DNA of 64,000 nt from Setoptus koraiensis (lineage: Eukaryota; Animalia; Arthropoda), in NCBI GenBank assembly GCA_048013815.1, contig CM106585.1:12834001-12898000 (forward strand), given 5' to 3'. A program made the translations under genes and the position numbers. Of this stretch, positions 23,792 to 61,961 are shown one piece after another (position 1 is the first letter of the stretch; the number at the start of each line of letters is the position of its first letter). Below the pieces are notes generated by a model. That model was not told the DNA's origin, made no database searches, and worked only from the letters and a program-made list of their open reading frames with translations.

Positions 23792-24150
23792 TCACTTGGT
23801 AACGGAAGCTGCAGCGACTACCTGCATGACATTAGGACAGTCGTGTTCGTCGCTGCTATCAAAGCAATTTGGGTGGCCATCACATCTTCTGGAACTGGGT
23901 ATGCAAGCTGCAAGGAACGAGTAGAATATACAAACAAACAAAATATATGCAAGTTAGTAATTAATTAATTGATAAGTATAATGAAATTTTTGGTTGGTCA
24001 TTATTATGTGAAATGTCATCATCATCTTACCTGAATCCATGCACTGCCACTCGATGTCCTTCAAACACTCGCTGTCGTGGACACACCTGAAAGTTGATTG
24101 GGTCACTTTTTGGCACAATTGATTTGAGCCCGAACACCAGCCTCCACAAC
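23792..24150 (-). CDS. Last two exons: Cys-rich module and LDL-receptor class A repeat
   Basis: Spliced sequence GCGGWCSGSNQLCQKVTQSTFRCVHDSECLKDIEWQCMDSACIPSSRRCDGHPNCFDSSDEHDC: a six-Cys LDLa repeat with the acidic D-x-S-D-E Ca2+ cage. Confidence 0.88.
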
Positions 24151-27100
24151 CTGACGAGTCAGTGTAATTGCGTATTTTAGCACAGAAGGGCACCTTTGCT
24201 CTCAATTGAAGAAGGCAAATCTCACTAGTGGTGCAATTGGAGCATGTGAGTGCATCTGTGTGTGTATTTACAACAATCATTGTGACGAAGGGATGACAAA
24301 ACAAAAGTTGGTTAGTGGTTTGACTTCAATTACATTTATAATATATTTATATGATATTGATTGCGATTGCGTAATCGTTAGCTTACCTTGAGCATTTGTC
24401 GCTAATATAGGCGTACGGGGGACATTGGTAGCCTCAATGCCTGGCACCTGATCTCCGAGCGCCACATCGATAGGAGTGTTCTTGTCCGTTGAGCCACTTT
24501 GACCGTTGGTGGGATTGTTGTTGTTGTTGCTGTTGGCATTGTTGCCATCAACAGTATAAATGTTGATAGTTGTAGATGGCGAATCTTGTTGCTGTTGCAA
24601 TGCAATCGATGAACTTGTGACTAATGATTCTGACACTGATGGCACTTCCGGTGTTAGTGGCTGCTCAATGGTGGCAGGTGAGGAATATTCATTTGAGCCA
24701 TACGAGGTGGATAGTGTTGGCAATTGTCTCTTGTAAGCGGAACATTCTTGTTGACAATCGGATATCTCAATAGAGATCTCGTGACTGCCAAAGCGCTGCT
24801 TACAAATGTCATCAGCCAATGATTGACCCGTTGTTTGTGACATACAAGTACGTATTCTAGAATGTGTTCTAGTTGAATCACAGAATCCATTCTTGTCCAA
24901 ACAAGATGACCAAGGTGACCATTCGGACCACACAACTGGCAATTGTTGGCTTGCAAAGGGATTTGATATTTCTGTAGAGAATATTGGCTGCTGAATATTC
25001 TGCTGATCTGACGTAGATGGCGCTCCTTGTGCTGACGGCAGCAAAACTGCACTGTCTTGATTATTATTACCATTATCAATGTGACTATCATGACGATCAT
25101 TGTTGTTATAGTGATGAGTTGCCGTTGTTGGCTGTGACATAAGCGGATGCTGCTGATGCTGTTGCATCATTCCCTCGGGTACTAAACTGGGGGGCACAAT
25201 ACCCTGACTCAAGTCTTTGTCTGGCACAGCTACACAATTAATGGGAGGAGGGGAGGGGGTGATAATAGCGGATAATAATAGAATGAAAAGATTAGAGAAT
25301 TGGACTTAGTTATTGCAGTCATAGTATAATCAGTCATGTCGAGCTTATGAGTTTTATGTGTTTATAGCGTTTCGTTGGAGCTGAGCGAATGCGACGACGA
25401 TCACGTAATAACGTGACAACGATATTGGCCGTGTTGCATTTGCATGGCGCGACATTGAGCCGCTCTAAAGATTCAAACTATTGCAATTGCTATTAACCAG
25501 CCATGGTGCAGCAAACAAAAAAAAGATTCAGCATCGCCGGCGATCGGTGTGGAACGACGCATTTGAAGCTTAGACAGTCATCGAGAACAACCAACCGACT
25601 GAAGTGACTGTGGCTGGCCCGCCAACGAAAGAGGTAGATTAAGAGTAAGAGTCTCTCTCGGGGGCCCCACTGTCGCTGTCAATGGCAAGCGGGCTTGCAA
25701 GCGGTGGGCATTGTCAATCAGGCACGCGCAATAATATTATCTGGCTCGTGTGTGTGTTAGCACGTGTCGGAATTGCAAGTGAGAGAGAGGCCGTGGCGAC
25801 ACAACTGTCAGTTGACTGCCTCTTATTGGTTCGTGTGGCGCTATCATTACAGTACAGTTATGATCAGATTGGCTGGGGCCCGATGCGAGCCCGCGGTTGT
25901 TTGGCAGATTTGGCAGACGCAGTGTGCGCTGGTCACAACAACAACAACAACAGCAGCGACAACAACAACAACAACTCTGGCTGGTCATCTCATTGTTGCG
26001 CAATCATTCATTAAATTGATTGGCTGTGGCAGCAGTGTGATGATGACTCATGCACAATTGTTGTGCAATCGCAACGGAGGCCAGCCAAGAAGACTGCGCA
26101 TTGCACAATAAGCAATTACTGGTTTGTTTGTCTCATCAGGCATCGCTAGCAAGTGGCCAAATATTGCCAGCCGGCTCGCAATATTCGGCTGGCCGGCTCG
26201 CGATATTCGGCTGGCCGGCGATATTCGGCTGGCCGGCAGTGTTTGGTGCGAACCAGCGGCTGGTTTGAATGTCCGACTAATGAAAATGGCAAATATACAC
26301 ACAATGGCGGGTTTAGGTGGCGACGGGCGACGCTGAGATATGCAGCGGCGCTCCAGTTTGCCAGCCAAGTGCCAAAAATGAATGAATGACTCAACGCGAA
26401 TGCATGAGCCAGTGATTGAGTAAGTGAGGCCAGCGCAGAGGTTGTAGGTTAGCCAGAGCGCCAGCAGGATTAGCCTTAGCCGCTAATCCTGCTGGCGCCG
26501 CCGCTGACGACTAACGGTATCTAGCAGTCAGATGGCGCTTGCAGCGACGAGTTGCGTGAGCTTGGCTGGTGGCGAGTTTTTTTGGCACACACACACACAA
26601 AAAGTTGGCCAGCAGCAGATTACATAATATTACATAACATTAGTGGGACGGGATTACTTGTGCCATTTGTGCTGTTTGCGCCAGTTGGCGCTGGTGCGAT
26701 ATGTGTTACAAAAGAAGATATAGAGGCAAGCAAGTTGCACTGCACAACAAGCGACCAGATGAGAAGACAAGTCATTATCTGTGTGTGCCAACAGTGTCAT
26801 TAGACAGTGACTGTGGTGACGCAACCCGCTGGCCACTATCTTGACATGGTTGCCTTGATATCGGCAACTTGAACCTGGTGCGATATGTGTTTGTGTGGTC
26901 ACTCATCAGCGGCAGCAGTTTGAGCAGTTGCGTCGGAGAAAGTGTTTGCTCACACACACACTGTATCATTTGAGATTAGCGAGCCGCAGCAGCCGCTAGT
27001 GACATTGCGGTGTTGCGGTCATTGTGCTTGTCAGATTGTAATCGTCCAACAATCAGCTGATACAAATACATAAAGAAACAAGATTAAACAGCTGGCTGGC

Positions 27101-30100
27101 TGGTTGGCGGGCCCAATTTGTTGTCGCATCATATGGTGCGTAAGGCTCATTGGCACGGCCTCTATGAGCCCTCTATTTATAAGCATCTATGAGCTTATCA
27201 GCTCATGGACGCTTATAAAGCTCGCTGCTAAAAAGCTCGGGGCCTTTTGTGTATTTATCAGCCATTTCGGGCTGATTTCGTGTTGGCCGATTGTGCTGGT
27301 AAGACCACAAAGTAACCACGCAATCGGCCACTACGCGGCGTCCATTGACGGATGTCCATTGATCCATCCATCAGTGGACACTGATGGATGTCCGTTGATC
27401 GGGCCTAGATAAACGGCCCAAATATTCGGGCCTAAATGGCAGCCCAAATAGAGGAAAGTATTGTTTTTGCAAGACCTTACATAACATGTGATCACACATA
27501 AAGATGACGGTTGGCACATTTCGCTTTGGGCCAGCCATCATGTTTGGCCGGGCTCGATGGCTGGCACGGCCGGCCGGCCAGAGATTGTCGAAATAAACGC
27601 GATAGTGAGCCCAAGTGGCCTAGTTAGTGGGCAAGAAAAGGAAGAAGAAAACATCAAACAAACAAACAAACAAACAAACCCAGTTGACAGTAGTGATAAT
27701 AATATAGGCCTTACACTTGACATAATGACAGCAGAGAAGATGGATTAAGTAGGAGAGAGCTCGCAATCGATGGATACACAGCATGCACTCGACAACTAGC
27801 TCGCTAATGATATGCCATTGGACGCCCACTCAATGGCCGTTTCGCTGACCACTAATGAATGAGCTTGGCCAGTCGGCAGTGTCACACACGGCTTGTGTCG
27901 TCGGCAATGCAACTCAAATTAGCGACTTGCACAACACACTGGCATTTGGCATTTGGCAGCTTTGCAAAGCGATCGATTGATGATGCAACTTTGGCCACAA
28001 CTCACTGGTCACTGTACCATTAGTAGCGTTAGTAGTGTTGGTGTTGCTAGTGCAGTGACCGCTCAATTGAGCATTGGGATTTTGTCGTTCATTTATTTTG
28101 GCAATATCAGCATCGTCAGCTGATGATCAGCGGCGCCACATAACGTCAGCTAGCCAGATAAATGGAGAGAGCGAGAGAAAAGCATCATTAATTGACGTAA
28201 TTAGCTAATATTTGACATAACTCTGTTGACTCCACTGGGCACTGCTGCTGCTGCACTGTGCAACAGCCAAGCAACAACAGCCAGGCAACAACAGCAACAA
28301 CAACAACACCGACAGCAAGACTAAGCGAGCCAACAGTGACAAAGTTGACGCGCGTGGGCGCCTTCGCCACACCAATTATTATGCGACTATTATGCAACTA
28401 TTATACCACAACAACTATCGTACAACTGTTATCAATAACAACTGGTGGTCATTGTTTATAATAGCTAGACTATAATAATAACTAGATGTCACTTAATTCA
28501 ATTTCGGCCAAACCAGCAGGTGTAAAGCTGTCCGATAGACAGATAATATAATAGTTGTGTATAAAATGGTAGAGGTGGCGCTACAGCAAGATTAATTGAT
28601 CGAAAGCGGCCAGTGTCATGTTTTTTATCGCCGATATCGCAGTCGATTGCATTAGTCAGTCGGCCAGTTGGTTCACCTGTTTGCAGCACAACATTCGCAG
28701 TCTCGTCTCACTGGACACACCACTGGACACACCACTGGACACACAGACACCAGCACAGGTGAACACAGGCGAAAAAGGCCAACAAAATTGGCCGACGCAA
28801 CAGCGCAAACGTCAAACAAACTGTCAAAATACCAAAATGCTGCCAGCTCCAACATTGCAGCAAACAAAGGTCGTTGCGCAACATTTGTTGTCGCTGTTGT
28901 TGCTGTCGCTGTTGTTGTCGTTGTCGTTGTTGCTGTTGCTGTTGTTGCTGCTGTTGCTGTTGTTGCTGTTGGTGTCGTTGTTGGCGTGGCTGGCGCGCCG
29001 TCGCCGGGTGATTTGCATATTTTTCATAACTGACTTGCTCCAGTTGCCCAAATGGACAATTGCAATTCAATAAAATATGCGATAATAAGGCAGTCAATGC
29101 TGAAAATGGCCAATATCGCATAGGCGGCAGTTATGTAACTAATATTTGCGTTGATAGTTGGCACACACATGCGACTGTTTGCACTTGAAACACACACACA
29201 CTATTGAATAGAGTGTGATGCCCACTCTTTCGTGTCTCGTATCTGATGATCTAATTAAAGTTCACACACCACAGCACACACACACACTACGACAGGTGAC
29301 TTGTGGGCCGGTTGTTGAGCTGGCGAATGCACTTGTTGAAACGGCCAAAGAGAGAGAGTTTTCAATTTCAATTTACAGTTGTATCTAGAGCTGGCCGGTA
29401 ACAGGCGACACAAATTAACAGCGCAATTTGCTGCCGGCCGCTCTGACAAGTGACTCGTTTGTTGTCAGTGCATCAGAGCCTGTCAATTACATAACAATAT
29501 TAGCATGCATAACACTGCTGCAAGCTAACAGCGACCGGGCCAGATAATTATCGGCCGTAGTTATTATTGTCAGCGTTGACCAACGACACACAAAGCAAAC
29601 AATGAGCAAACGACAACAGAGAGAGAGAGAGAGTGCAAAAACAAACAAACCAAATATCGTCAGCACTGACGATGGTGGCCGCCCCCGCAAACACACTCTC
29701 GGCTGCTATAACGGCTACTTGTTGGTTAATTTTGAGAGCGCTCGAATCGATGCAAAAAATCACATTCGGCTCATTTGTGGGCACGACAGGTGACCACTGG
29801 GCCGGTGTGCCAAGTGTGCAAATAATCAATGCAAATCAACATGTCGGCTAATGTTTTCTAGAAATCGAAATCGCAATCGCAACCCAAACACAAATGGAAA
29901 TGGAAATAATACAAATCCAAATGAGTTTGTGTGTTTGTTTTGTGAATAATTTAGCATCGACAAACAACAGCTTGCAGAGCGGCGAAAATTGCGCGCCGCA
30001 TATCGCCAATTGTCGACACTGTCGAGACTATCGAGATTGTCGAAACTATCGACACTGTCGACCATCGACATTTTGCACCATCGACATTTTGCACCATCGA

Positions 30101-39100: not shown

Positions 39101-42100
39101 GAAGCGCTGATAATCTCTGGCCCTATTCGCGCCGTCGATTCTGTATGATTGCACATGCGAATCCACGAGCGAATTTGCGGATAATTCCACATTTAATTCC
39201 GTGCTTAATAACATGCAAAACTGCGTGCACAACGCGCCAGCGGACGGAGCAACATAATTACTGCAGACGGGCGAGCAGATGATGAGGGCCATTTAATCAG
39301 CGGCTCCACTCGCCAACCGGCCAACCGGCCAATATTTGCATGCACTTGCCGAGTGGTCAGCGTGTTGAGCCGAGTGCCGTGCGTCAACTTGCAGTGCTCA
39401 ACACGCTGACCACTCCAAGTTGGCGCGCGGCGCCGCTAGGCGGCGCTCGATAATTGCCACTTGCTGCTGGCTGCCAGCTTTGGGTTCATGCGTCCAACAA
39501 ATGGTGCCCATTGTGGCCACTTTGCCCGTCGCTCGCCGTTGCCCGTCGCCCGATGTTGCCCGTCGCCCGATGTTGGCCGCCGGTCGGTCGGGCCGAACGG
39601 GCAACAGCGCCAACAATTGGTATCAATACAATGAGCGCGATGCAAAACAAGTCGCAAGTGGCTGCCGATGGCGCGATCGTGCGACTCATTGTGATTCGCG
39701 GTGACGGACACATCGGTGGCACTCAAGCGAACAGGTAGCCGGTCGTCGGTCGTCATATTTTGGCCGTTGTTGTTGTTGTGACAACAATGGCCAAAATATG
39801 ACCACTCCAATGGCCACTCAATGGCAGCCGCGAACCGAGAGCCGCGAACCGAGAGCCGCGAAACGAGAGCTTCGAAATGAGAGCTTCGAAATGAGAGCTG
39901 CCACCGGTGGCCGAATGGAGGATGCTTGCCGAATCGCTCAATTGGTCGGTGCGGCTCGGCCGACGATCGCCAGCAAGAGCGGCGCTCGCCGAGAGAGATG
40001 GCAAATTGGACAGAGCGAGAGAGATGGCAAATTGGACAGAGCGAGAGAGAGAATTAACACTTTTGTTGGGTCTCTTTGTGCTGCGAGCGCCTGTCAAATG
40101 TTTTGTCCATATTCAAGGCAAACAACAACTCGCTGCCACAATGAATAGACCCAATGCCAATCACCGCCGCGATTTGATTTTGTGCGCGGCCATTCTCAAT
40201 CCCGACCGGCGACCCGCGACTCCCGACCGGCGACTCGCGACCGGCGACTGCCGACCCGCGACTCGCGACTTGCGCTGGCAGTTTCGCCGCCGAGCGGGCC
40301 GAAGCTGTCGAGCGGGCCGGCGCTCGGGCAAGCCGAAACCCAGTGAAACAAAATCAGAGTCGGCCGACAACAACAAGTGTCTCAATGCACTTGAGCGCAT
40401 GATCGATGGGCGCGAGCGGCCGTCTACGCACGGTAAACAAATTTTATCATTATTTTTATTTCGACAACGGCATTTATCATGCGTTATCATGTGCGTTCGC
40501 AGAACAAAGGCCGCTCTCTCTGTTGATTGCTGCCGATATTTGCCGATGAATCGCTGATAAACTGCTGCCAGACCAACGATAAACTGCTGCCCGAGCGACC
40601 AAAAACGCTGCCAGAGCGACCAAAAACGCTGCCAGAGCAACCATAAACTGCTGACAAACTGCCGATAGAGCGGCCCTAATTGTTGCGCAGCCAGGCCAAT
40701 TAGTGCGCCAAACGCAAATGCATCATGCACAACAGGTAAACAGTCGCCGGGCTGCAAATTGCTGCTGGTCTAGTTAGCCAGTGATCGATCGGACCGACTA
40801 ATGGGCCGCCAACAGCAAACAAGCGGCGACAATTGCCGGCCCGAAGGCCAGCCTCGCCGGTGCTTTACCTGGCCATTATCTCGGGCCGGTGGCGGGCAAA
40901 AGCTCCACTCCACTTGCGGGCAAAACGCCGGCGAAACGCCAGCAAAATGCGAGCGAAATCGGGCGAGATGCGAGCAAATCGAAGCGAGGGCAAAGCGCAG
41001 GTAAATCGGAGCGAAATGGGAGTAAGGCTCCGAGGACGGCCATTAATTGGCAGCGTCGCAGAGTGGAAAGTAATTAATTTTGCGCCTGTGCATCCCCCAA
41101 TGCAAACAACACACAATTTGAGGCGCAATTAATTAGTGCGACGCTGCCCGAAACGCTGCTCCATTGCGGCCCGAGTGGCACAGACGAAATCATAATCCGA
41201 TAAGAGATAATTTGCAAAAATTGATGCTCTTTTACATGCGAGTGACCATTGGAAACTTACCATTTAATTTCATGCTCTTGATGTCCACTAAAAGCGTTGG
41301 CACGCCCGCCAATCTTGCGCCGCTTTCCCGCAGCGACTCCTCGAACGCCATGCCAATTTGCGGCGCCGCATACACTATGCTCTCGGACAACAGTACCCGG
41401 AAGCTCACTAAAATGCCCACGGGTAAGGCACGTCTGCGTGGACATTGGGCGTTTGGGCATTTAAATTGGACCATTTGCACCGATTAATAATAGTAAGTTG
41501 TTGTTATCGTTTTCATGTTGATGGTCGATGACGGCAATGACCATGTTGATGATGAAAATGGTGATGCCGGTGACGATGATGACGATGGCGATGATGGCAG
41601 CGGTGACCATGCAATTGATGGCGAAACGTAATGATGAGATAGAATAATAATTAGATATGGCATATCAACACATTGGCAACATCACATCGCAAGCGTCATT
41701 ATGCGACATGACAGCTAATTGCGCAACATGCAGCCCATTATGCGTACAACATGTATCACTATGTATTACATAATGCATCGGATATGCGCCACATTCAAGG
41801 TGAACATGAGCAACATTGTGCATGTTAACTGTGTTTGCTGTCTAATTAGCAATTTACTCCTATTTTATTAAATTATATCTTAGATTTAGTGGCATTATGT
41901 CTCGCTTGCTCACATTTCGAACAAACTTGACCGTTTTGGCCACTCGGGCCATTTCTGGCAGAGCTGGCCATTTGGCTGGCCATTGGCCGAAATGGGCCGA
42001 GCGGCCAAACTGGCCAGCGGGCTCAACAGTGTTGAGTCAACACACACACACACTGTTTGTACTTACGTTATTGAGGTGACTTCGGATCGGCCATAAAATC

Positions 42101-45100
42101 GTCGCATGTCGTTGCCTCTGAATACCTGATCGAGCTGTTTGTTGTGGCGGTCAATTAAGTTGGTTAGGTTCGTTAGTCGGTTGGTTGGCTAATTAGCAAT
42201 TAGTGTGCGATGCGAGTCTCGTCGCAACAACAGGATGCAACTCATGGCAAACTCATGGCAAACTCATGGCAAACTCATGCCAAACTCACAGCCTCACTCG
42301 GGCTACTCACCAATTTGACGATGCTTTCCGCCAGAGGGGAACGGGCCGAGCTCATGCTAATGGAATAGTTTTGGCTTATTATCACAAATTCGCCAATTAC
42401 CAATTTGCTACCTGAAATTGTGATGAAATTGTGATGGAATTGTGTGTGTATGAATTGCATAATTATTGCGTTATTATTATTAGTTATTATGCATATTGTT
42501 TTGCATGTCGCCGATATGACTCTCAGAGGGTATCTCTCAGATTGGGGCCATTTGGCATAATTTGGGATATTTGGGGGCTATTGGGGATATTTGGGAGGTA
42601 TTGGGAATATTTTGGGGGCATTGGGGCGAGACTTACGCAGTGGCAACTGGTCGGTGGTGTTGGCTAGTGGCTCCAGTTCGTTGGTGTGCGCTATTGTCCT
42701 GCCATTGTTTGCGTACGGCTGCTGCTGTCGATCTGTCGGTTGATAACGATTCAAGTTAGTTGGTTCAAGTTAGTTACGTTAGAATTGCGTCACGAGCTTG
42801 GATTATCGTTCAGTGTTTTGGGTATCGCCGAGTGTTTTGGGTATCGCCGAGTGTTTTGGGTATCGCCGAGTGTTTTGAATATCGTTGTGTTTAAATGTAG
42901 TCACGTTACGTAACGATGGCCGCAACTGCCAATTACGCCGGCCACTGGCGGCCACTCACTAATTGATTTGTCGGCCAGCGGCAGCATGTGCCAACAGTGG
43001 CTAGTTATGCAACAACTACAAGTTAGTTTGACAAGTCAGTTTGACAAGTCAGTTTGACGAGTTAGTTTGGGCGCATCGATGCCGCTCATGGCACAACCAC
43101 ACCAACTAATAACAACTGAAAGTAATCAGGCGCAATTTAGTGAAAAAGCTTGCGTCTTGCTGGCGGCTCCATCGGCACAACAATTCACTTTTGCGACAAC
43201 CCAGTTACGCTTCAATGTCTGCTCTATATCGCGCGATATCGTGCTTATGTCGTGTGCATATTGCGCGGATATTTCATGTATATCGTGCGGATATTTCGTG
43301 TATATCGCGCGGATATTTGGTGTATTGGTGGCGCCTATGTTTGGTGTATGTATAACGAGCGAGCTGGCTCACAGAGAGCTGACACACGAGGGCGAGCAGC
43401 TGATCGCTGTCATTGGTCGGTTAGTGTGAGCGGGGCCCGATGATTGATGGTCATGTTGATGTGACAATCAAGTGCTCTAATTATGTCACTAGTTCAACAA
43501 CGACAAGTCTTGTTGTAAACATTAATCTCTCTTCTCCGCTTCATGCTCGTAGTACAAGGCCCCACGTATGTGCGGCTGCCGACATTGGCTGGCACTCGAC
43601 TAGCTAGTCATGCGACTCGCACCACCATATAGCACCGCGGCACCACGGCACCACGAGGCACCACATCGCACCACATTGCACCATGCTGCACCATGCTGCA
43701 CCATATAGTGCAGCACTTGGCAAGTTGGTTGCAGTTGCATGCCAGCGACGCTGCGGGCTGCGACCCCGCGCGGGCTGAGGCTCGCCGGCGAACAAGCAAA
43801 TGAGTGAATGATGAATGGGCGGTTAAATTAAAAGTGGCTCCTCATTTGGCTGACTTGGCCGCCAGTGGGGCCACTCTGGCGCATGCTGCATCATGCTGCA
43901 TCATGCTGCATCATGTTGCACCATGTTGTATGATGTTGCATCATGTTGTATGATGTTGTATGGATGCGAGCGCGACTAATTCACTTTGCCGCCGCACTAA
44001 CTAACTAACAAACAAACCAAACCGAAGAAGCTACTCACACCGAACAGCTTTTAGCCATCAAGCGACGCGTGCTCCCATCCGCATCCACACTGCTCGACAC
44101 TGTGCCCGACGCATCCGCGCCGAATCCGCACTGTGCCCGACGTGTCCGCGCCGGTCCGCGCCGTATCCGCGCCATGTCCGCGCTATATCCGCGGCATATT
44201 CGCGGTATATGGACATTGTGTGGATACCATCGTACAAAGTGGATACCATCAGGCTACAGAGTGGACACTGGCGCGCAGAGTGGACACTGGCGCGTGGTGC
44301 GGACATCCAAATGTGCAAATCCGAAGCGGAGGCCACATGCTAATGGACAGTTACGGTTTTGGGCCGTATCAAAAGCGTCGCCAAACGCACGTTACAAGCG
44401 TTTCACTTGATCAATCACACGACGACCATCAACAGCCAAGAGAGGGAGCTGTGCGCCTAATTAGCGGCCACTCACTCACCATTAGTCGCTGACCATTACT
44501 TGTCGCTGTGAGTTGCTCTTTTGCGTCGCCAAAGCTGCTCTTTGCGCTGCAAACAGCGGCCGCGCAACAACAATGGCCCCGACTAATAACAGTCTCATCA
44601 CACTCTGTTACACTCTCCCTCACTCGGGCGTCTGGGAGCCGCTTGCGAGCAGTCGTCACTGTGCCAACAGCGAGTGATAACTGGTCAGAGCAGCGAGCAG
44701 CGTGCGGCCGCGCCATCAACTGACCGGAAGTAAATGGGGCCGCAGCGATAATGCAGCCATGATAAGCGGCCGTTAACTAATGCTCAGTGTTTAGGTGGCG
44801 CTGAATGGGGCGCCGAGCAAAATATATTTTGTTTGTGTGCATTATCTCTGGCGCACTCAACAATAGACAAGTAAGTGATGATGGCTCGCTCCATCTCATT
44901 ACCGGCTGCGTCCGTCGCTCGCATCGCGCAAAATTGTCGAGTTTGGCCCGCACAGTCCGGCCCGCACAGTCCGGCCCGCACAGTCCGGCCCACACTTGGG
45001 CCAACAGTGCACAGTCCGGCCAACAGTGCAAAGTGCAGTGCCGGTCTGCGCGGACACGGGCCGCATCCGTTGTGCGCGTTCGGGCAAGTTGCGGGCAAGT

Positions 45101-47558: not shown

Positions 47559-47602
<44 letters not shown>

Positions 47603-50600
47603 CAGCCATTTGATACGCCAACGGCCAATGGCAGCATGGCCGCCACAATGACATAACGGATAATTACTCAACGACGCAACTGGCTGCATTTGTTACGCTC
47701 ATCAACTCGACGGCTTGGCGACTCGACGACTCGACGGCTCGACGGCTCGACGACTCGGCGACTCGGCGACTCGACGACGACAGCGCAACCGATGCAAACG
47801 AGAACAAGTCGAGAAAGTGTCACTTTTGGCACTCGTCTCGTCTCCGTTTCTTCCCACACAAACTGCAACGAGCTGCCGAGAAATGTATTGCTGCCACTAT
47901 ATTTATCCATGCCGCGTTGTCAGTTTATTGTATAAATACACCGACGACTGACGACTGACGAATCACGACAAAACCGCGGCTAGACGCGGCCAGACGCGGC
48001 CAGACGCGGCCACACATGGGCGGCACACAGAATTTTATTTTGCAACAAGACGAAACAAAATGGAAACAAAACGCAACAACAAGACGCAACAAAACGATGC
48101 AACGAAATCTCGATACTCACAGGATTTGCGAGGTTCTCTCGCCACTCGTCGCAACACATTCGACGCGGCCCGCCCGCCCGCTTGTTATGTTAGAGATGAC
48201 CGCGCCAACGACACTCCCCTCGCGGCTCCTCTCCTCATGAGAGTCTCCTCATGAGAGTCTCCTCATGAGACTCTCAACATGAGACTCTCAACATGAGACT
48301 CCCATGGCTCTTTTCGTGGCTCCCTGCGCGGCTCCCGTCGCGGCTCCCTTCGTGGGGCCGCGCTCGAGCGGAGGGCTCGCCCCACAGTGCAGTTGCATCA
48401 TATCATGTCTTGCATCACACGGTGCCTGCACCATGTGCGTGCTATATGTGGCTGCTGTATTGCATAACTGGCGCACAAGACACTGGCAGCAATCATGGGT
48501 GAATTATGTAAATGAGGTGCGCGCTCCATGGAGCTAATAAGCGCCAATTGGTGAGCTAGCCCAGCGAGACCGAACACACCCAGACCCAACAAACAAACAG
48601 CAAGCAAACAAACGAGCGGCCGATATCATCGATCGATGACTCATCGCTGCCACTTATCAATTTGAGACAACGCGCGCGCGCCCCATTACATAACTCGCGT
48701 CAAATGGCTACACAAGCGAGGACACAAAAGAATGTTGTGACGCGCAAAAGTCAAAAGTCGTCACAATGCTGTCGCTCTACAGTGTCACTGTTGGCTGTTT
48801 ATGCTGTTGCGCTGGCTGTTCACGGTGCCACTGGTTGTGTAAGCGGCCAGTGTTTGCTCATTTCATTACTGCTAGTGCGCCCGTGGTCAATTGCACGGCG
48901 CGCCGTGGCGTCCACGTGCAAACAGCCGATAGCGCCGGATCGAATTCGCAGCCCCACGCATTACGTGCTCGGCCGAAGCCAATTCTAGGAAGCGGCGAAC
49001 GCTTGCAAGCGGCTCGTCGCGAACGCGGCTCCTTGCAGACGCGATTCGCGACGAACCCGACGGGCGAGAAGACGATAAAATGACATGCAAGAGCAGAGTC
49101 AATAATAGTAATAATAATAACAATAATGGATGGCGAGGGGCTCCACATTAATCACGCCATTACCATCATCTCGGCTGCCATTTGAGCCGTTGTAGCCGCT
49201 CTCGAAGGCACCCAAGAAGCCAATTTTGATGTTGCTTGCACGTGCAACTAGCCAATCGTGAGTGCGCCCCAAACAAAAGTAAAACACGAGCCAGTGAAAA
49301 ATGTTCAAAACACAATGGCCGCTGGCCGTAAACGATACACGGGTTACATGAGGGGGCCCGCAAACTGACTTATCTCATCATCGTCATCGTGCTTGATACA
49401 ATTGGGGCACCACCGCACCGCTGCACCGCTCTCGCGCCGCCCCTGCATCTTGCACCGTCGGCTGCGCATCTTGCACCGTCGGCTGTGCATCTTGCGTCGT
49501 GTGGCTGTACCGTTGGCGGCGCACGCTTGCTAGTCGATGCAGAAACGAGTTTAGCTGACTCATAGGTGCAGCAGCGCCTATGAGGCAACTATGACGCAAC
49601 GCCTGTCATTCAAATCAAAAATCGCTCATTGGCGCTGCGCGCGTCCGCCGGCGAGCGATTTGGCCCGTCGTTGCCTTTTGTTGCTCGTCGTTGCTCGTCG
49701 TTGCTCGTCGTTGCTCGTCGTTGCTTGTCGTTGCTCGTGGGACCCGGCCCACGGCGACCGACAACGAACAACAACAACGAACAACAACAACGACGGGCAA
49801 CAACGACGGGCAACAACGACGGGCAACAACAGACGAGCGGCCGAGAGTTTTCGCAGGGGACAGCGCGACTTGGGTCGGCGCTCACCATTAAGAGAATCCG
49901 AATGGAATTCGCAGATTCTCAAAAACAAACTCACTCGCAAATCGGGCGAATGCGACGGCCACAACGGGCGCGCTAATGACACTGCCAATAGCGGCGCCCC
50001 ACACGCCAACGTATCAGCGGGTTAAATCTCGCCTATTGGGCTTGTTGGGCGCCTGCCGAAATGTGTGCCATTGGACCTGGCGAGTGACGGTTGCTTTCTT
50101 GAAAGAACTCTTGTCGTTATTATTATCATAAATTAGAATCTGTGCGCCAACGCCGGCGCACATCATTATCTTTCGCTTGCGCGCTCCATTTATCCCGCAG
50201 TCAACACACTCACTGACGCTCTAACTTAGAGACTCTAAGTAAACAAGCGCGGATATTTATATCCGCGCTCTCATATATTTATATATCCGCGCTTTTTGTA
50301 CTTTTTGCTGCAGCTTTCCAGCTCGCCAGCGAGGGCCCGCGTCTTGCCGAGTGAAAGCTGTTGTCTGTCTGGTTTGTTGTGTTTGCTGACTGGCTGACGC
50401 GGATTACCATTACATGTAGTCCGGCCGGCAATTTTTGCTGTGTATGTGTGCCAGCGATCGGCTGCACTCGGATATACGGCTAATGGCGGCTACTGGCGGC
50501 TACTCGCAGCTACTGGCAGCTACTGGGGGCGCCCCAGAGGCCGCTGCTGTGCGGTGCTAAACAAACACGCCGGGGATAAAAGCTGTTGGCTGCTTTTTAA

Positions 50601-53600
50601 GAGCAAAGTTTTTAGTTTTACAAACGGGGCTGTTTGCAAAGTGGAGCTGCCCGTGTTTGCTCACCGGCCGCCAAAAACTGACCAGTGTCAACTGTTATAC
50701 ACTATACAGCAGCACATGTAGGGCCGACCATTGTATTGTTGTCGGCCGGGGAGATGTTGCACTGAAAATTAATTATGCCCGCTCGCATGAACATGCGCTG
50801 GACACGCGATGACCGTCAACGGCAACGACAACAACAACAGCGACAGCGACAACAGCGACAACAACATTGCCACCATGCCCCATCATGCCTGACCGTGGTG
50901 AGGTTCCGCTGGGCGACACCAGCGTCTCCGTTTAGCAGTGGCAACAACAGTTTTGCAAACAAGTTTTTGTTTGTATGTTTTGCGGGGCTGCTGCTGCTGC
51001 ACTTGGTCGCTGTTGTTGCACTTGGTGGTTGTTGTTGCATTTCGGCGTCGTCGTTGTTGCATTGGCAGCGCGTTCGGATGTGCCAATGAGCGACACAAAT
51101 CTTGCGGCCTTCGGGCGGCCTTCGAACGCGCTCCCAAATGCACCAAAACTCCGCTTCGGACGGAATCAATTGGAACAACCAAAACAACATTTTCGGTTGG
51201 CTGTTGGTTCCATCATTAGCACCGCCAGTCTAATTGTGAGTTAACACGCAATTTACGCGCAAACGCCATGGCGAAAAGAATTGTTGCTTTGGCGGCTGTA
51301 CCGAGAGAATTGAGAATAGAGTTGGCGATTGTTTGGGCGATTCTGTCGCCAGCGCTGGCAAGTTGCAGCGATCGCAAAGCAAACCAATAGTTTGTTTGTC
51401 GCTGCAGTTGGCACCAGCAACAGCAACGGCCACAAACAAACAAACTCGACAAAGAATAGTGCCTCTTCATTGTCACAAATTGGCTTCCCTTTCTCTCTGG
51501 CCGGTGTGTGTGTGCACTTGACTGGCTACCTCGCTCTTTTTGCTGCCAAGTCTGTGGCTGCTGCTGCCGCTGCTGACCAAACAACAAATATTATGATTAT
51601 TATTACATAACAGCAACAACAACAACAACAACAAATCAATGTTGCTGCATGTTGTGTGAGAGAATTGTCATCGCCGCCAAAGTTGTGTTGTCCGCCAAAC
51701 ACAACAACACATGTTAACGTCAACAATTCACACCGAGGGAGAAAGAAATCCTTTGTTATTATTCAATAGTCACTGGGCCGATTGACAACAATCGCCGCAT
51801 GTCCGAACGTGAGAGATTTCACTCCAACAGCCGACAGCCAACAGCCAACAGCCGACAACCGAGAGCCGACAAACGCCAGCCAACAGCCAACAACCAACAA
51901 CCGACAGCCAACTATTGGCTGGTACGGCGGTGATAAAATTTATGGATTAGCATGATAATGCCAATCCAGGTGATAACAGCGCATAGCTCGGCGAGCAAGC
52001 CAACATTGTGCAATAGACAATTGTGCACATAATCAAATACACAATTGCGCAACACACACAACAAAGATTGACAATTGTTGCATAATCAACTGGAGCTACA
52101 ATTGTAATGAGAGTGGCACAAACAAGTGTATCAATGTGATTCTTTTTATAAATTCACCACTAGTCTGCACAATTATCATTATTGTTATTACCGTGTGGAC
52201 GGTATGTTTCTTGTTGTGTCTTGTGACTGCCGCCGCTATCATAGTGAACAGGGTGCGCTCATTATGCTAATTAGTAGAAGCAGGTATTTCAAGTTTAGAG
52301 CGCCCTCATTTGCTACGATGATTATATTGTTATTGTTCATTGCCACGATCGCCACCATCACCATCGTCGTCGTCGTCATCATCATTTACGTTGTGCTTGG
52401 CGACTACAACACTTGTTACAGTTGAGCACATAACAGCATGAACAACTGAACTGGCCAATCAAGCCAAACACATAAACTTGGACAATAATAAACTTGCGTA
52501 ACTCGACAACAACAACAGCAGCAACAACAGCAACAACAACAAGTGGGTGCAGCGTCGCTGGACATGGACAGATATAGCCAGACAAAGTTGAGGGCGCTAA
52601 CACGACGACCGAGACCTCTCGAGCTGAGCTGTGAGTCGGCAATGTGCGCTGGTCTCGCCAGCTCACTATTGATCGTTTGCTATTTAGCTAATTGTTTTAA
52701 TTATAGGCTTCATCGGGCAACAGCTCGCAAGACAGACACTAAGGCGGCCAACTCATTACTTATTAGCATAAACGACGAAGAGACAATCAACAAGTGGCGC
52801 AATTCACTCAATTCGAGCATGTGTTGCCCATGCCGATGATATCATTACATAAGTGCAATAATCAAGCCATTATCTTAATGGGCAACATTGCATTGTTTTC
52901 AAATACAATAATAGTAATAATAATACACAACTTACCTTTGGCTAGAGATGAACTGGCGGCCCCTTGAGTCAGGGCTATCAGGCTTCTTATGGTGAGCGCA
53001 CCGACAATTAGTAATATTATAACAATCATTAGACGATAGAGATATTTAACTTGAGTGTAATAATTGAATAGATGCTGGCATTTAATTGATTTCAATGAAA
53101 ATAGCACATTGTGTGGCGTGGCTCTATGATTTGGTAAACGCGGATGAGTATTTAAGTGATGCTGCTGATGATTTAATGATTTTCTCAAATTATTAGCAAC
53201 TAGTGAATGCTGTTTGCTAGTTTTGTTGTTATTTTGCAAAGACAATCTCTGATGATGATCAACAATATTTTGCGAGGCATTAGTGGTTTGAGTGGTGAGC
53301 GAGTCAGCCGTTGGAGTAGTTGTACTTGACGCCGTAGCCGATGGACTTGGCAATGAAGTTTGCTGTGACTGCTGCTGCTGTTGGTGGTGGTTGTTGTTGT
53401 TGTTGTAGTAGTTGTAGTTGTTGTTTGTGTTGCTGTTGGTGGGAATAATGGGATTGATCTGGTCGTAGATATGATAAATAGATGAGGTGGCCGATGAGGA
53501 ACATTGTTGTTGTTGTTGCTGTTGCTGCTGGAGGTTGAACATTTGATGTTGCAAATATTGAAATTGATATTGATTTTGTTGCTGGTTTTGTTGCTGATGA

Positions 53601-54109
53601 TGCTGATTAGTTAGGTGATTGAGGAGTTTACTATTGAGCGTCGGATAATTTAATGGCACGCCAGAAGATGGGAGCGAGGGCGCTTGGGCGTGAATCTGAC
53701 TTGGACTAATCAGAGTGGTGATAACGGGCGGCGAGTGACTGTCCGACAATGAGGGTATTATGGGCTGATAGGGATTGTTGGCCTGAGACGACGAGGCTAT
53801 GGAGCCGCTGTAATAGCCGCCACTGGGTTGTTGCTGTTGTGGTTGTTGTTGCAAAGTGTAAATATATTGCTGCTGTTGCTGCTGGTTGTTGTTATTGTGG
53901 TGATGATTGTAAGATAAATTATTTTGAGTAATCATGTCACATTGTTGCTGATAGGATGGAAAATAGGGATGAGATGTGGCCACCATGGGCTGCACCAGGG
54001 GCCCAATTAGCGAGCTAGTGTGAAGTTGCTGCTGCTGATTGGTTGCCTTATTTGGGGTCTGGTCGGCGCCGCTAGAGGGCCTCGTCGTTTTCCTCGTGAA
54101 CAGGCTCAT
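23792..54109 (-). CDS. Large multi-exon type II membrane protein: TM-SEA-TSP1-Cys-rich-LDLa (about 896 aa; 934 aa with an optional exon)
   Basis: Phase-compatible GT-AG exons are 54109-52936 (end phase 1), 42732-42637 (1-1), 42411-42311 (1-0), 42134-42067 (0-2), 41433-41261 (2-1), optional 28119-28006 (1-1), 25229-24387 (1-1), 24150-24031 (1-1) and 23907-23792. Without the optional exon they total 2691 nt, or 897 codons with no internal stop. Joining across the 10 and 16 kb introns is inferred. Confidence 0.75.
24387..25229 (-). CDS. Exon with a thrombospondin type-1 repeat and Ser/Thr/Pro/Asn-rich spacers
   Basis: WSEWSPWSSCLDKNGFCDSTRTHSRIRTC carries the WxxWxxW, C and RxRxC signature. Acceptor TGTGTAG at 25230, donor G|GTAAGC at 24386. 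Confidence 0.88.
26458..26498. repeat. Perfect 17-bp inverted repeat with a 7-nt loop
   Basis: GCGCCAGCAGGATTAGC-cttagcc-GCTAATCCTGCTGGCGC. Confidence 0.9.
28006..28119 (-). CDS. Candidate symmetric (phase 1-1) mucin-like cassette exon of the SEA/TSP1/LDLa gene
   Basis: 114 nt with acceptor CTGATCATCAG (GCTGAC branch-like motif upstream) and donor A|GTGAGT. It reads DDADIAKINERQNPNAQLSGHCTSNTNTTNATNGTVT, with several N-x-T sequons. Confidence 0.45.
30821..30950. repeat. Compound minisatellite: 10-mer x9 followed by 15-mer x2.5
   Basis: AACGC(A/C)ATCG-type units at 30821-30910, then AACGCACCAAAAGCG units. Confidence 0.9.
31481..31573. repeat. CAA/CAG trinucleotide-rich tract
   Basis: Mixed (ACA GCA)n / (CAA)n run. 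It produces the spurious poly-C, poly-L and poly-AV ORFs in the track. Confidence 0.9.
35041..35120. repeat. 10-bp tandem repeat, 8 degenerate copies
   Basis: ATGAGCCACA-type units in exact 10-nt register. Confidence 0.92.
41261..42732 (-). CDS. Four small exons encoding a linker and a SEA domain
   Basis: Spliced sequence ...DQLPLRSKLVIGEFVIISQNYSISMSSARSPLAESIVKL|LDQVFRGNDMRRFYGRSEVTSIT|RALPVGILVSFRVLLSESIVYAAPQIGMAFEESLRESGARLAGVPTLLVDIKSMKLN. It follows the SEA pattern (strand, Y, helix LDQVF, Y..SEV.S, G.LV.F.V, helix, L.VD). All four donors are GT(A/G)AGT. Confidence 0.8.
42812..42877. repeat. 19-bp tandem repeat, about 3.5 copies
   Basis: (AGTGTTTTGGGTATCGCCG)3 plus a partial copy. 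Confidence 0.93.
46789..46854. repeat. 12-bp tandem repeat, 5.5 copies
   Basis: (CCAGTTCAGCGG)5 plus CCAGTT. Confidence 0.95.
47561..47600. repeat. (TG)20 microsatellite
   Basis: Perfect 40-nt TG run. Confidence 0.97.
52936..54109 (-). CDS. First coding exon: Gln/Asn/His-rich cytoplasmic region and signal-anchor TM helix
   Basis: ATG in a GCCATG context at 54109 and no N-terminal signal peptide. There is a single hydrophobic helix YLYRLMIVIILLIVGALTIRSLIAL near the exon end, then a G|GTAAGT donor at 52935 (phase 1). An acceptor at 54149 implies a further 5' UTR intron. Confidence 0.8.
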
Positions 54110-54925
54110 GGCTGGCCCAATTGTGTGTGTGTATGTGTGTTATAAATACTTTTGAGAGTGTAGAAATATATTCTCAAATTCTCGAATTGTGTAAATATAA
54201 TTGATGTACAGATTGATGTATCGATCGATATATTGATTGATGCCTGATGTTAGCTAATTATTTGGGATCACAGTTGGGCGATGCGAACGGTTGCTGCGCT
54301 CATCTTGCTGCTTGCTGTTGTTGTGATTCGCTGCTGTTATGCAAACTTGTGGCCAAATAAATAATTGAACTGGTCAGCTGATTGGCTAATTAATCGATTG
54401 ATTGATTGACGCCGATAGATAATTTTGGATTTTTGATTAATTTGATTTGATCGGTTGTTTGTTTGCTGTTGTTGCTGTTGTTGTTGTTGTTGTTTGTGGT
54501 GCAAACGGCGACACGTCCTGCCCATACGAGATACACAATTGAACTGGCATGCGTTTTACCCTTGCTCAGCTTTGCGCCACTAATTCAAGGCGTGCGCATG
54601 CTCACAACTCAAATTGGTTTTGGGGGGGAGCGCGCTCAACTGGGCGCTCTAGTTCGAGCCCTACGGAACTAATTGGCGCGCATGCGCCGGCCGCTCCAGC
54701 GAACTGCAGCCAGATGTTGCTGTTGGGCGACGATCGATGTTCGGTATGAATATCGACCAACTTGTGAACTTCACAATGCGAATCGCACAGTGTGAATCTC
54801 ACAGTGTGAATCTCACAGTGTGAAAGCGAGCACCAACCGTCACCGGGATCCGAGCGTGAATGCGAACGAGGATCCGAACGAGAATTCGAGTGTCGACGTC
54901 CATACGACAATGCGAGCACGACAGT

Positions 54926-55049
54926 GTGAATACGACTCTGTGAATAGTGACAATGTGAATACGACTCTGTGAATAGTGACAGTGTGAATACGACTCTGTG
55001 AATAGTGACAATGCGAATACGACTCTGTGAATAGTGACAACGTGAATAG
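54926..55049. repeat. 29-bp higher-order tandem repeat, about 4.3 copies
   Basis: The unit GTGAATACGACTCTGTGAATAGTGACAAT is built from two GTGAATA-initiated half-units. Confidence 0.92.
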
Positions 55050-55887
55050 GACGCCGTGAATAGTGACAGGGTGAGCGCAGGCGTTCGCGAATCGCCATGG
55101 CGGCCGGTGGCAGTTGCAAGAATTTGCGCGCGCCATCTAGCGTGGATTCGCAACACCACTCTGGGGCCGTTGCAACTGCATTATTTTCGCCTCCAATGAC
55201 TATGACTGCTTGTGCAGTCGCAGTGCCATTCAGGGTATAATATGGTGATAGTATGGTGATGGTGTCGTGATGGTATTGTGATAGTGTTGTGATGGGACTG
55301 AAATGACAACGATAACAATAATTTATCGTTAGCAGTTGTACACTGTAATATGTCGCCGTTGTTGCACGTAAGCGAATTTATTTTTACGAAATTATAAAAC
55401 TGGAGCGCACCAACAACGACACCGACGCCAACAAAGCCAAGTGCCTGGTTACGCGCTGGGTGCAAGGCAAATACGCAAATGCGCAAATGCCCGAACGCCC
55501 GAATGCGGCCCATCGGTGCGCGCTGGTTGTTGGTTGGTTCGGTTGCGGAGGCCCCGATCGCAAGGGGTCGGTGGCGATCAAAAGAAGAAGAAGAAGTTTG
55601 AGAGAGCCACTGAGAGAGCTCACCTTTGGGTTCGTTGTTCGCTTGTGCGCCGTCCATTCTATTCTTATTTTAATTCTCTCAACAATGAGCGTTGGCCGGC
55701 TTGCGACGGGCACCGGCATTGTGATTGGCGTTGGCATTCGCAGAATATCGGGCCAGCGGCAGCAGCATCATTTGTTTGGCATTTGTTGTTGCTGTTGTTG
55801 TCGTCGTCGTCGTTATAATAACAAGAGTGACACTAACAACAAAAGCCGCTGATCTGATTTCGCCCGGCCCATGCTGCCCCGCTCCGA

Positions 55888-55959
55888 CCGTCGACTGCCG
55901 ACTGCTTACCGTCGACTGCCGACTGCTTACCGTCGACTGCCGACTGCTTACCGTCGACT
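55888..55959. repeat. 21-bp tandem repeat, 3.4 copies
   Basis: (CCGTCGACTGCCGACTGCTTA)3 plus a partial copy. Confidence 0.95.
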
Positions 55960-61900: not shown

Positions 61901-61961
61901 ACGCCAAGCTGCCCGCTGGGGCCCCACGGCGCGATATGCGCCTATGCTCTCAGCTCTGCGT

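What the first reader, a model, noticed from the sequence alone, without database searches (positions are those of the whole stretch)
23792..54109. 30-kb hidden gene: type II membrane protein with SEA-TSP1-Cys-rich-LDLa ectodomain and no protease domain
Seen: eight phase-compatible exons, four of them tiny and mostly invisible in the ORF track, join into one ORF of about 896 aa. It has a ~360-aa Q/N/H-rich cytoplasmic tail, a signal-anchor, SEA, TSP1, a mucin-like spacer, a 4-Cys module and LDLa, then a stop 125 nt from the convergent TRPC gene. Known: type II topology with a membrane-proximal SEA and LDLa repeats is the stem of type II transmembrane serine proteases (enteropeptidase, matriptase), which end in a trypsin domain; TSP1 next to LDLa occurs in complement C6-C9. 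I do not recognise this exact combination as a named family. Inference: a protease-less TTSP-like receptor or decoy, or an apical matrix/adhesion organiser. The very large non-coding domain suggests tight developmental regulation.
Basis: partly seen in the sequence, partly recalled or inferred. Interest (0 to 1): 0.78.

Follow-up and report, generated by a model that had tools for sequence, protein, structure and literature searches.

The report
Mite SEA-TSR-LDLa membrane receptor gene
The eight-exon gene is real. It encodes a mite member of an unstudied, protease-free cell-surface protein family that is already present, unnamed, in the genome annotations of most arthropod groups.

Summary
Eight minus-strand exons (54109-23792) with canonical AG/GT sites and compatible phases give 2796 nt, or 931 aa rather than about 896. 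They encode a Q/N/S-rich N-tail, one transmembrane segment, a SEA domain split over three micro-exons, one thrombospondin repeat, an S/T/P-rich spacer, an 8-Cys module (not 4-Cys), one LDLa module and a stop 125 nt from the convergent TRPC gene.

Homology verifies the micro-exons. Exons 3, 4 and 5 each align, in order and abutting, to the SEA region of full-length relatives.

The architecture is not unique. It is a conserved family found in mites, ticks, scorpions, horseshoe crabs, spiders, millipedes, crustaceans, hemimetabolous insects and Hymenoptera. Every database name is either "uncharacterized" or a mistaken LRP, perlecan or sortilin label. None of the 189 retrieved proteins carries the GDSGG serine-protease motif. 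I found no Diptera, Lepidoptera or Coleoptera among the hits, and no paper.

The window's gene belongs to a mite clade with a single LDLa (other members have 2-5). Its SEA lacks the G|S self-cleavage motif, and its tail lacks the DNPxY/F motif that many relatives carry.

It is most likely a non-enzymatic ligand-binding or endocytic surface receptor; the function is inferred. The scan had not noted this family before.

The parts
52936..54109 (-). Exon 1: start codon at 54109, a roughly 359-aa Q/N/S/H-rich cytoplasmic tail, the signal-anchor, then donor GTAAGT
   Evidence: No profile match to relatives, as expected for a low-complexity tail.
52964..53032 (-). Single transmembrane segment (residues about 360-382, LMIVIILLIVGALTIRSLIAL), with K/R on the N-side, giving type II orientation
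   Evidence: Kyte-Doolittle 2.72 over 19 aa; no other exon exceeds 1.75.
42637..42732 (-). Exon 2 (96 nt, symmetric): linker between membrane and SEA. Skipping it would keep the frame, so it could be a cassette exon.
   Evidence: AG / GTAAGT, phase. No homology support.
42311..42411 (-). Exon 3: first part of the SEA domain (VIGEFVIISQNYS...)
   Evidence: hhalign to family profile columns 245-268, E 4e-3. BLASTP to Oppia nitens P0103 residues 70-105, E 2e-5.
42067..42134 (-). Exon 4: middle of the SEA domain (LDQVFRGNDMRRFYGRSEVTSI)
   Evidence: hhalign to profile columns 280-301, E 1e-3, abutting exons 3 and 5. No pairwise BLASTP hit.
41261..41433 (-). Exon 5: last part of the SEA domain. The G|S self-cleavage position reads PVGILVSF, with no serine.
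   Evidence: hhalign columns 306-353, E 4e-4. BLASTP to P0103 residues 135-185, E 1e-7. Six-frame hmmsearch E 0.006.
24387..25229 (-). Exon 6: linker, the TSR, and an S/T/P/N-rich mucin-like spacer
   Evidence: Relatives' ORFs begin at the same VPDKDL boundary.
24745..24942 (-). Thrombospondin type 1 repeat (WSEWSPWSSC ... RIRTC ... 6 Cys) with a helical insertion
   Evidence: hhalign E 6e-8. W11, W14, W17, R35, R37 and four Cys (C20, C39, C53, C69) are invariant in 33 sequences. AlphaFold pLDDT 91.5. The top of the Foldseek list is dominated by TSR structures, but E is only 0.14-1.
24031..24255 (-). Exon 7: family-specific 8-Cys module (about 24083-24244, signature GCGGWC) plus the N-terminal half of the LDLa
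   Evidence: 53 relatives at E<=1e-3, best 5.9e-32. The 8 Cys are invariant or nearly so in 40 sequences. Model pLDDT 80 with no PDB fold match.
23792..23907 (-). Exon 8: C-terminal half of the single LDLa (CIPSSRRCDGHPNCFDSSDEHDC), a 14-aa tail, and the TGA stop at 23794-23792
   Evidence: Pfam PF00057 at 2.8e-7, above cut-off. hhalign 7e-13. No further LDLa anywhere in the window.

Best explanation
This is one real gene encoding a 931-aa type II (N-terminus inside) single-pass membrane glycoprotein. It belongs to a conserved but unstudied arthropod family. The family's layout is: cytoplasmic tail, transmembrane anchor, membrane-proximal SEA domain, one thrombospondin repeat, a mucin-like stalk, a family-specific 8-cysteine module (GCGGWC), and LDLa modules, with the protein ending there and no enzyme domain. 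The window's gene falls in a mite clade in which the LDLa array is reduced to one module, the SEA domain has lost its self-cleavage serine, and the tail lacks the DNPxY/F motif of many relatives. Shown: the gene structure, the domain content, family membership and the family-wide absence of a protease. Inferred: it works as a non-catalytic surface receptor. On this reading the stalk holds out a binding head, the LDLa binds calcium and a basic patch on a ligand, and the TSR binds matrix or sulphated glycans. In relatives with the NPxY-like tail motif, the receptor would carry its ligand in by clathrin endocytosis, as LDL-receptor relatives do but with inverted topology.
For: The exon model has canonical sites and compatible phases. 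There is one TM with positive-inside flanks. Pfam finds the LDLa. Exons 3, 4, 5, 6, 7 and 8 map in order to family-profile positions 245-268, 280-301, 306-353, 365-429, 471-554 and 557-587, and to the mite orthologue P0103. Full-length relatives have Pfam SEA above cut-off plus several LDLa stretches, and no other domain. Relatives come from mites, ticks, scorpion, horseshoe crabs, spiders, millipede, crustaceans, hemimetabolous insects and Hymenoptera. None of 189 retrieved proteins has GDSGG, and the window has none either. Ten relatives of the single-LDLa clade stop 2-5 residues after the LDLa. On the tree, the window sits in a clade of 13 rows with 96/96 support, together with Fragariocoptes setiger. 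A DNPxY/F-type motif is present in the tail of 93 of 145 longer family proteins.
Against: No transcript data were available, so the 10-kb and 16-kb introns and exon 2 are unverified by RNA. Exon 1 has no detectable sequence homology to relatives' tails. Pfam does not see SEA in the single exons, and the joined protein was not searched, by rule. The function rests entirely on what the domains do elsewhere. The window's protein lacks the NPxY-like motif and has only one LDLa, so the endocytic reading is weaker here than for relatives. The single-LDLa relatives are ORF calls on unnamed contigs, so their stops could in principle lie in introns. That is unlikely, because ten relatives with nine different tail sequences all stop within 5 codons.
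Confidence: 0.72

Rival explanations
1. It is the stem of a type II transmembrane serine protease whose trypsin exon lies further away, reached from the CAG|GTAGTC site at 23821.
For: SEA plus LDLa behind a signal-anchor is the TTSP stem (established knowledge). A GT follows the LDLa at 23821.
Against: No trypsin motifs occur on either strand of the 64-kb window. None of 189 family proteins has GDSGG. RefSeq models from many orders end just after the last LDLa. Ten clade relatives stop 2-5 aa after the LDLa. GTAGTC lacks the +5 G that all seven used donors share. The only model that runs on (F. setiger P0006) does so into the antisense strand of the neighbouring TRPC gene, which is full of stops here.
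Confidence: 0.03
2. Two genes are involved: exon 1 belongs to a separate Q-rich membrane protein, and the SEA-TSR-LDLa ectodomain starts from another, unfound first exon. Oppia nitens isoform X2, for comparison, starts directly at its TM.
For: Exon 1 and exon 2 have no homology support. A 10-kb intron separates them from the rest. The P0103 isoform begins at the TM without a long tail.
Against: Relatives need a TM directly upstream of the SEA domain and commonly have 100-430-aa low-complexity tails. Exon 1 holds the only strong TM, it ends in a consensus GTAAGT right after that TM, and it is in phase. The family-HMM six-frame scan found no other N-terminal candidate.
Confidence: 0.1
3. It is a decaying, truncated copy (pseudogene in the making) of the 5-LDLa family gene.
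For: It has only one LDLa where other members have 2-5, it has lost the SEA cleavage motif, and it has lost the tail motif.
Against: All exons are open with intact splice sites. Every invariant Cys, Trp and Arg of the TSR, the 8-Cys module and the LDLa is kept. The same reduced layout is shared by a well-supported clade of 13 sequences at 58-80% identity, which implies long-term retention.
Confidence: 0.05
4. It is mainly a structural apical-matrix or adhesion organiser rather than a ligand-uptake receptor. A mucin-like stalk protein would anchor extracellular matrix through the TSR and the Cys-rich head.
For: SEA plus a mucin-like spacer is typical of membrane mucins, and TSRs bind matrix (established knowledge). 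The window's protein lacks the NPxY-like motif.
Against: Nothing tested here separates this reading from the receptor reading. Relatives' conserved tail motif and LDLa arrays point to cargo binding and uptake.
Confidence: 0.25

Closest known systems
Unnamed arthropod orthologue group (e.g. Centruroides XP_023240132.1, Oppia nitens LOC128953173, Tachypleus XP_076307066.1, Anabrus XP_068085529.1, Nasonia LOC100679901, Fragariocoptes KAG9511062.1)
   Same: Type II anchor, SEA, one TSR with a WxxWxxW/RxR ladder, an S/T-rich spacer, the 8-Cys GCGGWC module followed directly by LDLa, and an end without any enzyme domain. The 8-Cys-module exon is 34-80% identical to these relatives.
   Different: The window's gene has one LDLa instead of 2-5, no G|S motif in SEA (kept in scorpion, horseshoe crab and millipede), and no DNPxY/F tail motif. 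Three of its introns (10 kb, 16 kb and one small) cut the ectodomain into micro-exons.
Type II transmembrane serine proteases (enteropeptidase, matriptase, HAT/DESC)
   Same: N-in signal-anchor, membrane-proximal SEA, and LDLa module(s) in the stem.
   Different: No S1 protease domain and no activation site in any family member. The TSR and the 8-Cys module are not TTSP stem modules.
LDL-receptor family (LDLR, VLDLR/LpR, LRPs)
   Same: LDLa ligand-binding modules with the acidic calcium cage. Many relatives have a cytoplasmic DNPxY/F motif like FDNPVY.
   Different: Opposite membrane topology. No EGF or YWTD propeller was found by Pfam. The window has a single LDLa and lacks the NPxY motif. 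Database names such as 'LRP1-like' are automatic mislabels.
Perlecan N-terminus (SEA followed by LDLa modules)
   Same: SEA then LDLa order, which explains the automatic 'basement membrane proteoglycan-like' names.
   Different: Perlecan is secreted and huge, with Ig and laminin modules. Here the protein is membrane-anchored, short, and has a TSR and the 8-Cys module.
Complement C6-C9 (TSP1 next to LDLa)
   Same: A TSR and an LDLa in one ectodomain. The TSR resembles properdin-type repeats most closely (PF22195 was the best weak hit).
   Different: No MACPF domain. The TSR and LDLa are separated by a roughly 120-aa spacer and the 8-Cys module, and the protein is membrane-anchored.

Membership tests
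Arthropod type II SEA-TSR-8Cys-LDLa family (unnamed) | N-terminal cytoplasmic tail followed by a single TM (signal-anchor) | tested here: met
   one segment with Kyte-Doolittle 2.72 at residues 360-382, with K/R on the N-side. Relatives have their TM at residues 5-435.
Arthropod type II SEA-TSR-8Cys-LDLa family (unnamed) | SEA domain just outside the membrane | tested here: met
   Exons 3, 4 and 5 align colinearly and abutting to the SEA columns of the family profile and to Oppia P0103. That region is Pfam SEA in relatives. Pfam on the single exons was negative. The joined sequence was not searched.
Arthropod type II SEA-TSR-8Cys-LDLa family (unnamed) | One TSR with a WxxWxxW and RxR ladder | tested here: met
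Arthropod type II SEA-TSR-8Cys-LDLa family (unnamed) | 8-Cys module with a GCGG(W/H)C signature directly before the first LDLa | tested here: met
   all 8 Cys and the G35, G37 and G38 positions are conserved.
Arthropod type II SEA-TSR-8Cys-LDLa family (unnamed) | Array of 2-5 LDLa modules | tested here: not met
   Only one LDLa. The six-frame family-HMM scan and a motif scan find no other in the window. The single-LDLa state is shared by a 13-row clade.
Arthropod type II SEA-TSR-8Cys-LDLa family (unnamed) | Cytoplasmic DNPxY/F (insects: N-terminal M-D/E-N-x-x-Y/F) motif | tested here: not met
   Absent from exon 1 and from the minus strand upstream to the window end. Present in 93 of 145 relatives, so it is common but not universal.
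Type II transmembrane serine proteases | C-terminal S1 (trypsin-like) catalytic domain with an activation site | tested here: not met
   No TAAHC, DIAL or GDSGG motifs in the window. The stop comes 14 aa after the LDLa. None of 189 relatives has one.
Type II transmembrane serine proteases | Type II anchor with a SEA and/or LDLa stem | tested here: met
LDL-receptor family | Type I topology, LDLa clusters plus EGF/YWTD propeller, NPxY tail | tested here: not met
   The TM precedes the ectodomain. Pfam finds no EGF or propeller in the window exons or in relatives. There is no NPxY in the window.
SEA domain, self-cleaving subtype | G|S(V/I)VV motif between strands 2 and 3 | tested here: not met
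   The window reads PVGILVSF. GSVVV, GSVTV, GSLTV and GSVIV are kept in scorpion, horseshoe crab and millipedes. The motif is also absent in Oppia, ticks and insects.
Complement C6-C9 / MACPF | MACPF pore-forming domain after TSP1-LDLa | tested here: not met
   No such Pfam hit in the window exons or in relatives.

The most novel reading that the evidence does not exclude
The family as a whole may be an undescribed, ancient arthropod receptor class: an 'inside-out' LDL-receptor-like endocytic receptor. It would have type II topology, an NPxY-type sorting motif at or near the cytoplasmic N-terminus, and a new 8-Cys fold before the LDLa array. It may have gone unstudied because it is absent, or unrecognisably diverged, in Diptera, Lepidoptera and Coleoptera. 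The mite clade would then be a minimal one-LDLa version.
Probability: 0.3. Interest if true: 0.6.

Novelty: new member of a known kind. Interest (0 to 1): 0.4.

Why it matters
For this genome, the result fixes a hard gene model: four exons of 68-173 nt are spread across 30 kb, and ORF-based callers miss them. More broadly, it shows that the odd protease-less SEA-TSR-LDLa combination is not a one-off. It marks a conserved arthropod surface-protein family with no name, no paper I could find, and apparently no fruit-fly counterpart. Ticks, mites, bees, ants, locusts and plant bugs all have it, so a first functional study in any of these species would be new ground. Such a study could use RNAi, localisation or uptake assays. 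The 8-Cys module has no recognisable solved fold.

Tried and rejected
- **Pfam on single exons:** only the LDLa half passes the cut-off. The TSP1 and Dickkopf_N hits are sub-threshold.
- **Six-frame SEA search of the held genome:** it misses the split domain.
- **Word search with exon 6:** nothing found, because of the length window.
- **PDB sequence searches of exons 6 and 7:** only a weak BAI1 TSR hit.
- **Fold searches of the 8-Cys model:** Foldseek E>2 with scattered R-spondin, TNFR and Bv8 rows, and a best VIA-align Z of 3.0. No fold was assigned, and the weak Dickkopf_N hint was dropped.
- **Paralogue search in the 48.7 Mb held for this genome:** it found only the gene itself.
- **Nested genes in the introns:** ten long ORFs give no real Pfam family.
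- **An upstream exon with the DNPxY motif:** none on the minus strand from 52900 to 64000.
- **The C-terminal extension of the F. setiger model:** rejected as an antisense-TRPC artefact.
- **Literature:** four searches found nothing on this architecture or on the relatives' locus names. One search was a malformed query.
- **The look-up of encoding contigs:** it was closed. Relatives' DNA, intron positions and dN/dS could therefore not be examined.
Full report
**Observation**

A script recomputed every boundary. The exons are 54109-52936, 42732-42637, 42411-42311, 42134-42067, 41433-41261, 25229-24387, 24255-24031 and 23907-23792.
- All acceptors are AG. The donors are GTAAGT (four), GTGAGT, GTAAGC and GTAAGA.
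- The phases chain without a break. The total is 2796 nt, which is 931 codons plus TGA at 23794-23792.
- Exon 1 is 18% Q, 12% S and 12% N. It ends in the only strong hydrophobic segment of the model (residues 360-382, Kyte-Doolittle 2.72), with K and R on the N-side. This gives an N-in, type II orientation.
- The neighbouring + strand ORF (20832-23666) is a TRP channel with TRP_2, Ion_trans and ankyrin domains. Its stop lies 125 nt from this gene's stop.

The joined protein was never assembled for a search or a fold.

**Domains in the window**

- On single exons, Pfam sees only the C-terminal half of an LDLa in exon 8 (PF00057, 2.8e-7, above cut-off).
- Pfam also gives a sub-threshold properdin-type TSR in exon 6 and a sub-threshold Dickkopf_N in exon 7. 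Exons 1-5 give nothing.
- A six-frame Pfam SEA search of the held assembly also misses the locus, as expected for a domain cut into pieces of 33, 22 and 57 codons.

**Relatives**

An exhaustive phmmer search with exon 7 (74 aa) against 1.84 billion representatives gave 53 proteins at E<=1e-3, the best at 5.9e-32. Cluster look-ups and two word or profile searches named many of them:
- **Mites:** Fragariocoptes setiger, Medioppia subpectinata, Oppia nitens, Halotydeus destructor.
- **Ticks:** hard and soft ticks.
- **Other chelicerates:** the scorpion Centruroides, both horseshoe crabs, and spiders.
- **Myriapods:** Chamberlinius and Strigamia.
- **Crustaceans:** krill and amphipods.
- **Insects:** mayflies, cockroaches, Orthoptera, thrips, Hemiptera, and essentially all Hymenoptera sampled.

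Every name is 'uncharacterized', 'hypothetical' or 'SEA domain-containing', or an automatic mislabel (LRP1-like, perlecan-like, sortilin-related, vitellogenin-receptor-like). No Diptera, Lepidoptera or Coleoptera appeared among the named hits. This is an observation at these search sensitivities, not proof of loss.

Pfam on full-length relatives gives SEA above cut-off plus several LDLa stretches, and nothing else.

**Verification of the micro-exons**

I aligned 14 full-length relatives (A1) and compared each window exon with that profile:
- Exon 3 matches columns 245-268 (E 4e-3).
- Exon 4 matches columns 280-301 (E 1e-3).
- Exon 5 matches columns 306-353 (E 4e-4).
- The exon 6 TSR matches columns 365-429 (E 6e-8).
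- Exon 8 matches columns 564-587 (E 7e-13).

The matches are colinear, and they abut at the proposed splice junctions. A six-frame hmmsearch of the whole window with the family HMM returns the same exons in the same order and no others.

Against the RefSeq orthologue of the oribatid Oppia nitens (P0103), exon 3 aligns to residues 70-105 (E 2e-5). Exon 5 aligns to residues 135-185 (E 1e-7). Both stretches lie in that protein's Pfam SEA region.

The three tiny SEA exons are therefore real. Exons 1 and 2 have no homology support. They rest on splice signals, phase and the family's need for a TM just upstream of SEA. Exon 2 is 96 nt, so skipping it keeps the frame.

**No protease and no further LDLa**

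- The window has no trypsin signature on either strand and only one D-x-SDE LDLa signature on the minus strand.
- The part of the family HMM covering LDLa modules 2-5 finds nothing in the window.
- Ten relatives of the same clade end 2-5 residues after their single LDLa, with nine different tail sequences.
- RefSeq models from other orders end shortly after their last LDLa.
- The candidate donor at 23821 (GTAGTC) lacks the +5 G shared by all seven used donors.
- The one model that continues past the LDLa is F. setiger KAG9511062.1. Its extension aligns to the antisense strand of the window's TRPC gene (22524-22967 and 23084-23119, E 2.5e-18). That frame is full of stops here. The extension is an annotation artefact, and it also shows that the convergent TRPC neighbour is conserved.

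**Domain detail**

- **TSR.** The TSR segment (window 24718-24960), folded with 32 relatives, gives pLDDT 91.5. The top of its Foldseek list is dominated by TSR structures: thrombospondin-1, properdin, BAI1, F-spondin, THSD7A, UNC5, Sema5A, C6 and C9. The E-values are only 0.14-1, which I take to reflect how small and elongated the domain is. W11, W14, W17, R35, R37 and four cysteines (C20, C39, C53, C69) are invariant in 33 sequences.
- **Cys-rich module.** It has eight conserved cysteines and a GCGGWC signature, not four. Its model (pLDDT 80) matches no solved fold: Foldseek E>2 and VIA-align Z<=3.0.
- **SEA.** The SEA domain keeps the G|S(V/I)VV self-cleavage motif in scorpion, horseshoe crab and millipedes. 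It reads PVGILVSF here, and it is likewise altered in Oppia, ticks and insects. Self-cleavage is therefore not expected in this protein.

**Family variation**

- Hymenopteran members lack Pfam SEA and the TSR motif, and go from the TM through a short spacer to the 8-Cys module.
- The constant core of the family is therefore a type II anchor, the 8-Cys module and LDLa.
- Many members carry a conserved cytoplasmic motif. It is (V/L)DNPA(Y/F) in chelicerates and myriapods, and M-(D/E)-N-x-(G/A/C)-(Y/F) at the very N-terminus in insects. It is present in 93 of 145 proteins of 450 aa or more.
- The motif resembles the FDNPVY sorting signal of LDL receptors (established knowledge). The window's gene does not have it.

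**Phylogenetic position**

A maximum-likelihood tree on the 74 exon-7 columns is short, and many forks are unresolved. It does place the window in a clade of 13 rows with 96/96 support. That clade holds the closest relative (P0001, 79-80% identity), F. setiger, and ten unnamed ORFs from public read assemblies. All rows of the clade that extend past the LDLa have a single LDLa. The clade lies inside a 99/95 chelicerate clade. The oribatid (Medioppia/Oppia-type) sequences, of which the full-length Oppia P0103 has five LDLa, fall outside the single-LDLa clade. I could not tell whether the two forms are orthologues or old paralogues. No paralogue is present in the 48.7 Mb held for this genome.

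**Mechanism (inferred)**

The protein has no catalytic domain. It has a signal-anchor, a rigid SEA base, a glycosylatable stalk and a cysteine-rich head ending in an LDLa. That LDLa carries the D-x-x-x-D-x-x-DE acidic sequence pattern typical of LDLa modules (sequence; that this pattern forms the calcium cage is established knowledge). The most economical reading is a non-enzymatic surface receptor or co-receptor. In relatives with the NPxY-type tail motif, it would probably be an endocytic one. A matrix-anchoring role cannot be separated from this with sequence data. The TTSP-decoy idea has no specific support.

**Novelty**

The gene is a new, structurally reduced member of an orthologue group that already exists in public annotations but has no name. 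Four full-text searches found no literature on it. The scan's own notes hold nothing similar. Earlier notes on this genome call it a mite, and the nearest named relatives agree.

**Limits**

- No RNA evidence was available.
- The joined protein was not analysed.

Noticed in passing
window 22524-22967 and 23084-23119 (minus strand, inside the TRPC gene): The C-terminal ~150 aa (residues 662-812) of the Fragariocoptes setiger model KAG9511062.1 (P0006) align to the antisense strand of the window's TRPC gene (E 2.5e-18), where the frame has many stops. That public model seems to be fused to antisense TRPC sequence. The match also shows that the convergent TRPC neighbour is conserved between the two mites.
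   Followed up: partly
relatives P0016, P0024, P0025, P0027, P0032, P0049 and others (cytoplasmic tails): A conserved NPxY-like motif occurs in the tail: (V/L)DNPA(Y/F) in chelicerates and myriapods, and M-(D/E)-N-x-x-(Y/F) at the very N-terminus in insects. It is present in 93 of 145 longer family proteins and absent from the window's exon 1.
   Followed up: partly
relatives P0032, P0046, P0049 and about 60 hymenopteran hits: Hymenopteran members have no Pfam SEA and no WSxWS motif, so the TM is followed almost directly by the 8-Cys module and five LDLa. No dipteran, lepidopteran or coleopteran member appeared in any search.
   Followed up: partly
window 25230-41260 and 42733-52935 (the two large introns): The introns are GC-richer than the flanks (about 50-57% against about 40%). 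They are packed with short minisatellite arrays: 61 Tandem Repeats Finder rows in 32 kb, with periods of 7-43. Ten long ORFs inside them have no real Pfam family.
   Followed up: partly
window 20832-23666 (+): The TRPC-type channel (TRP_2, Ion_trans, ankyrin) is encoded as one uninterrupted 944-codon ORF. This contrasts with the heavily split neighbour, and the two genes' stops are only 125 nt apart, so their 3' UTRs probably overlap.
   Followed up: no
P0001 (closest relative, 79-80% identity over exon 7): The ORF call of the closest relative reads into non-homologous sequence exactly at both exon 7 boundaries. This suggests the two short introns flanking exon 7 are shared with that species, whereas the more distant clade members encode TSR, 8-Cys and LDLa in one ORF.
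   Followed up: no
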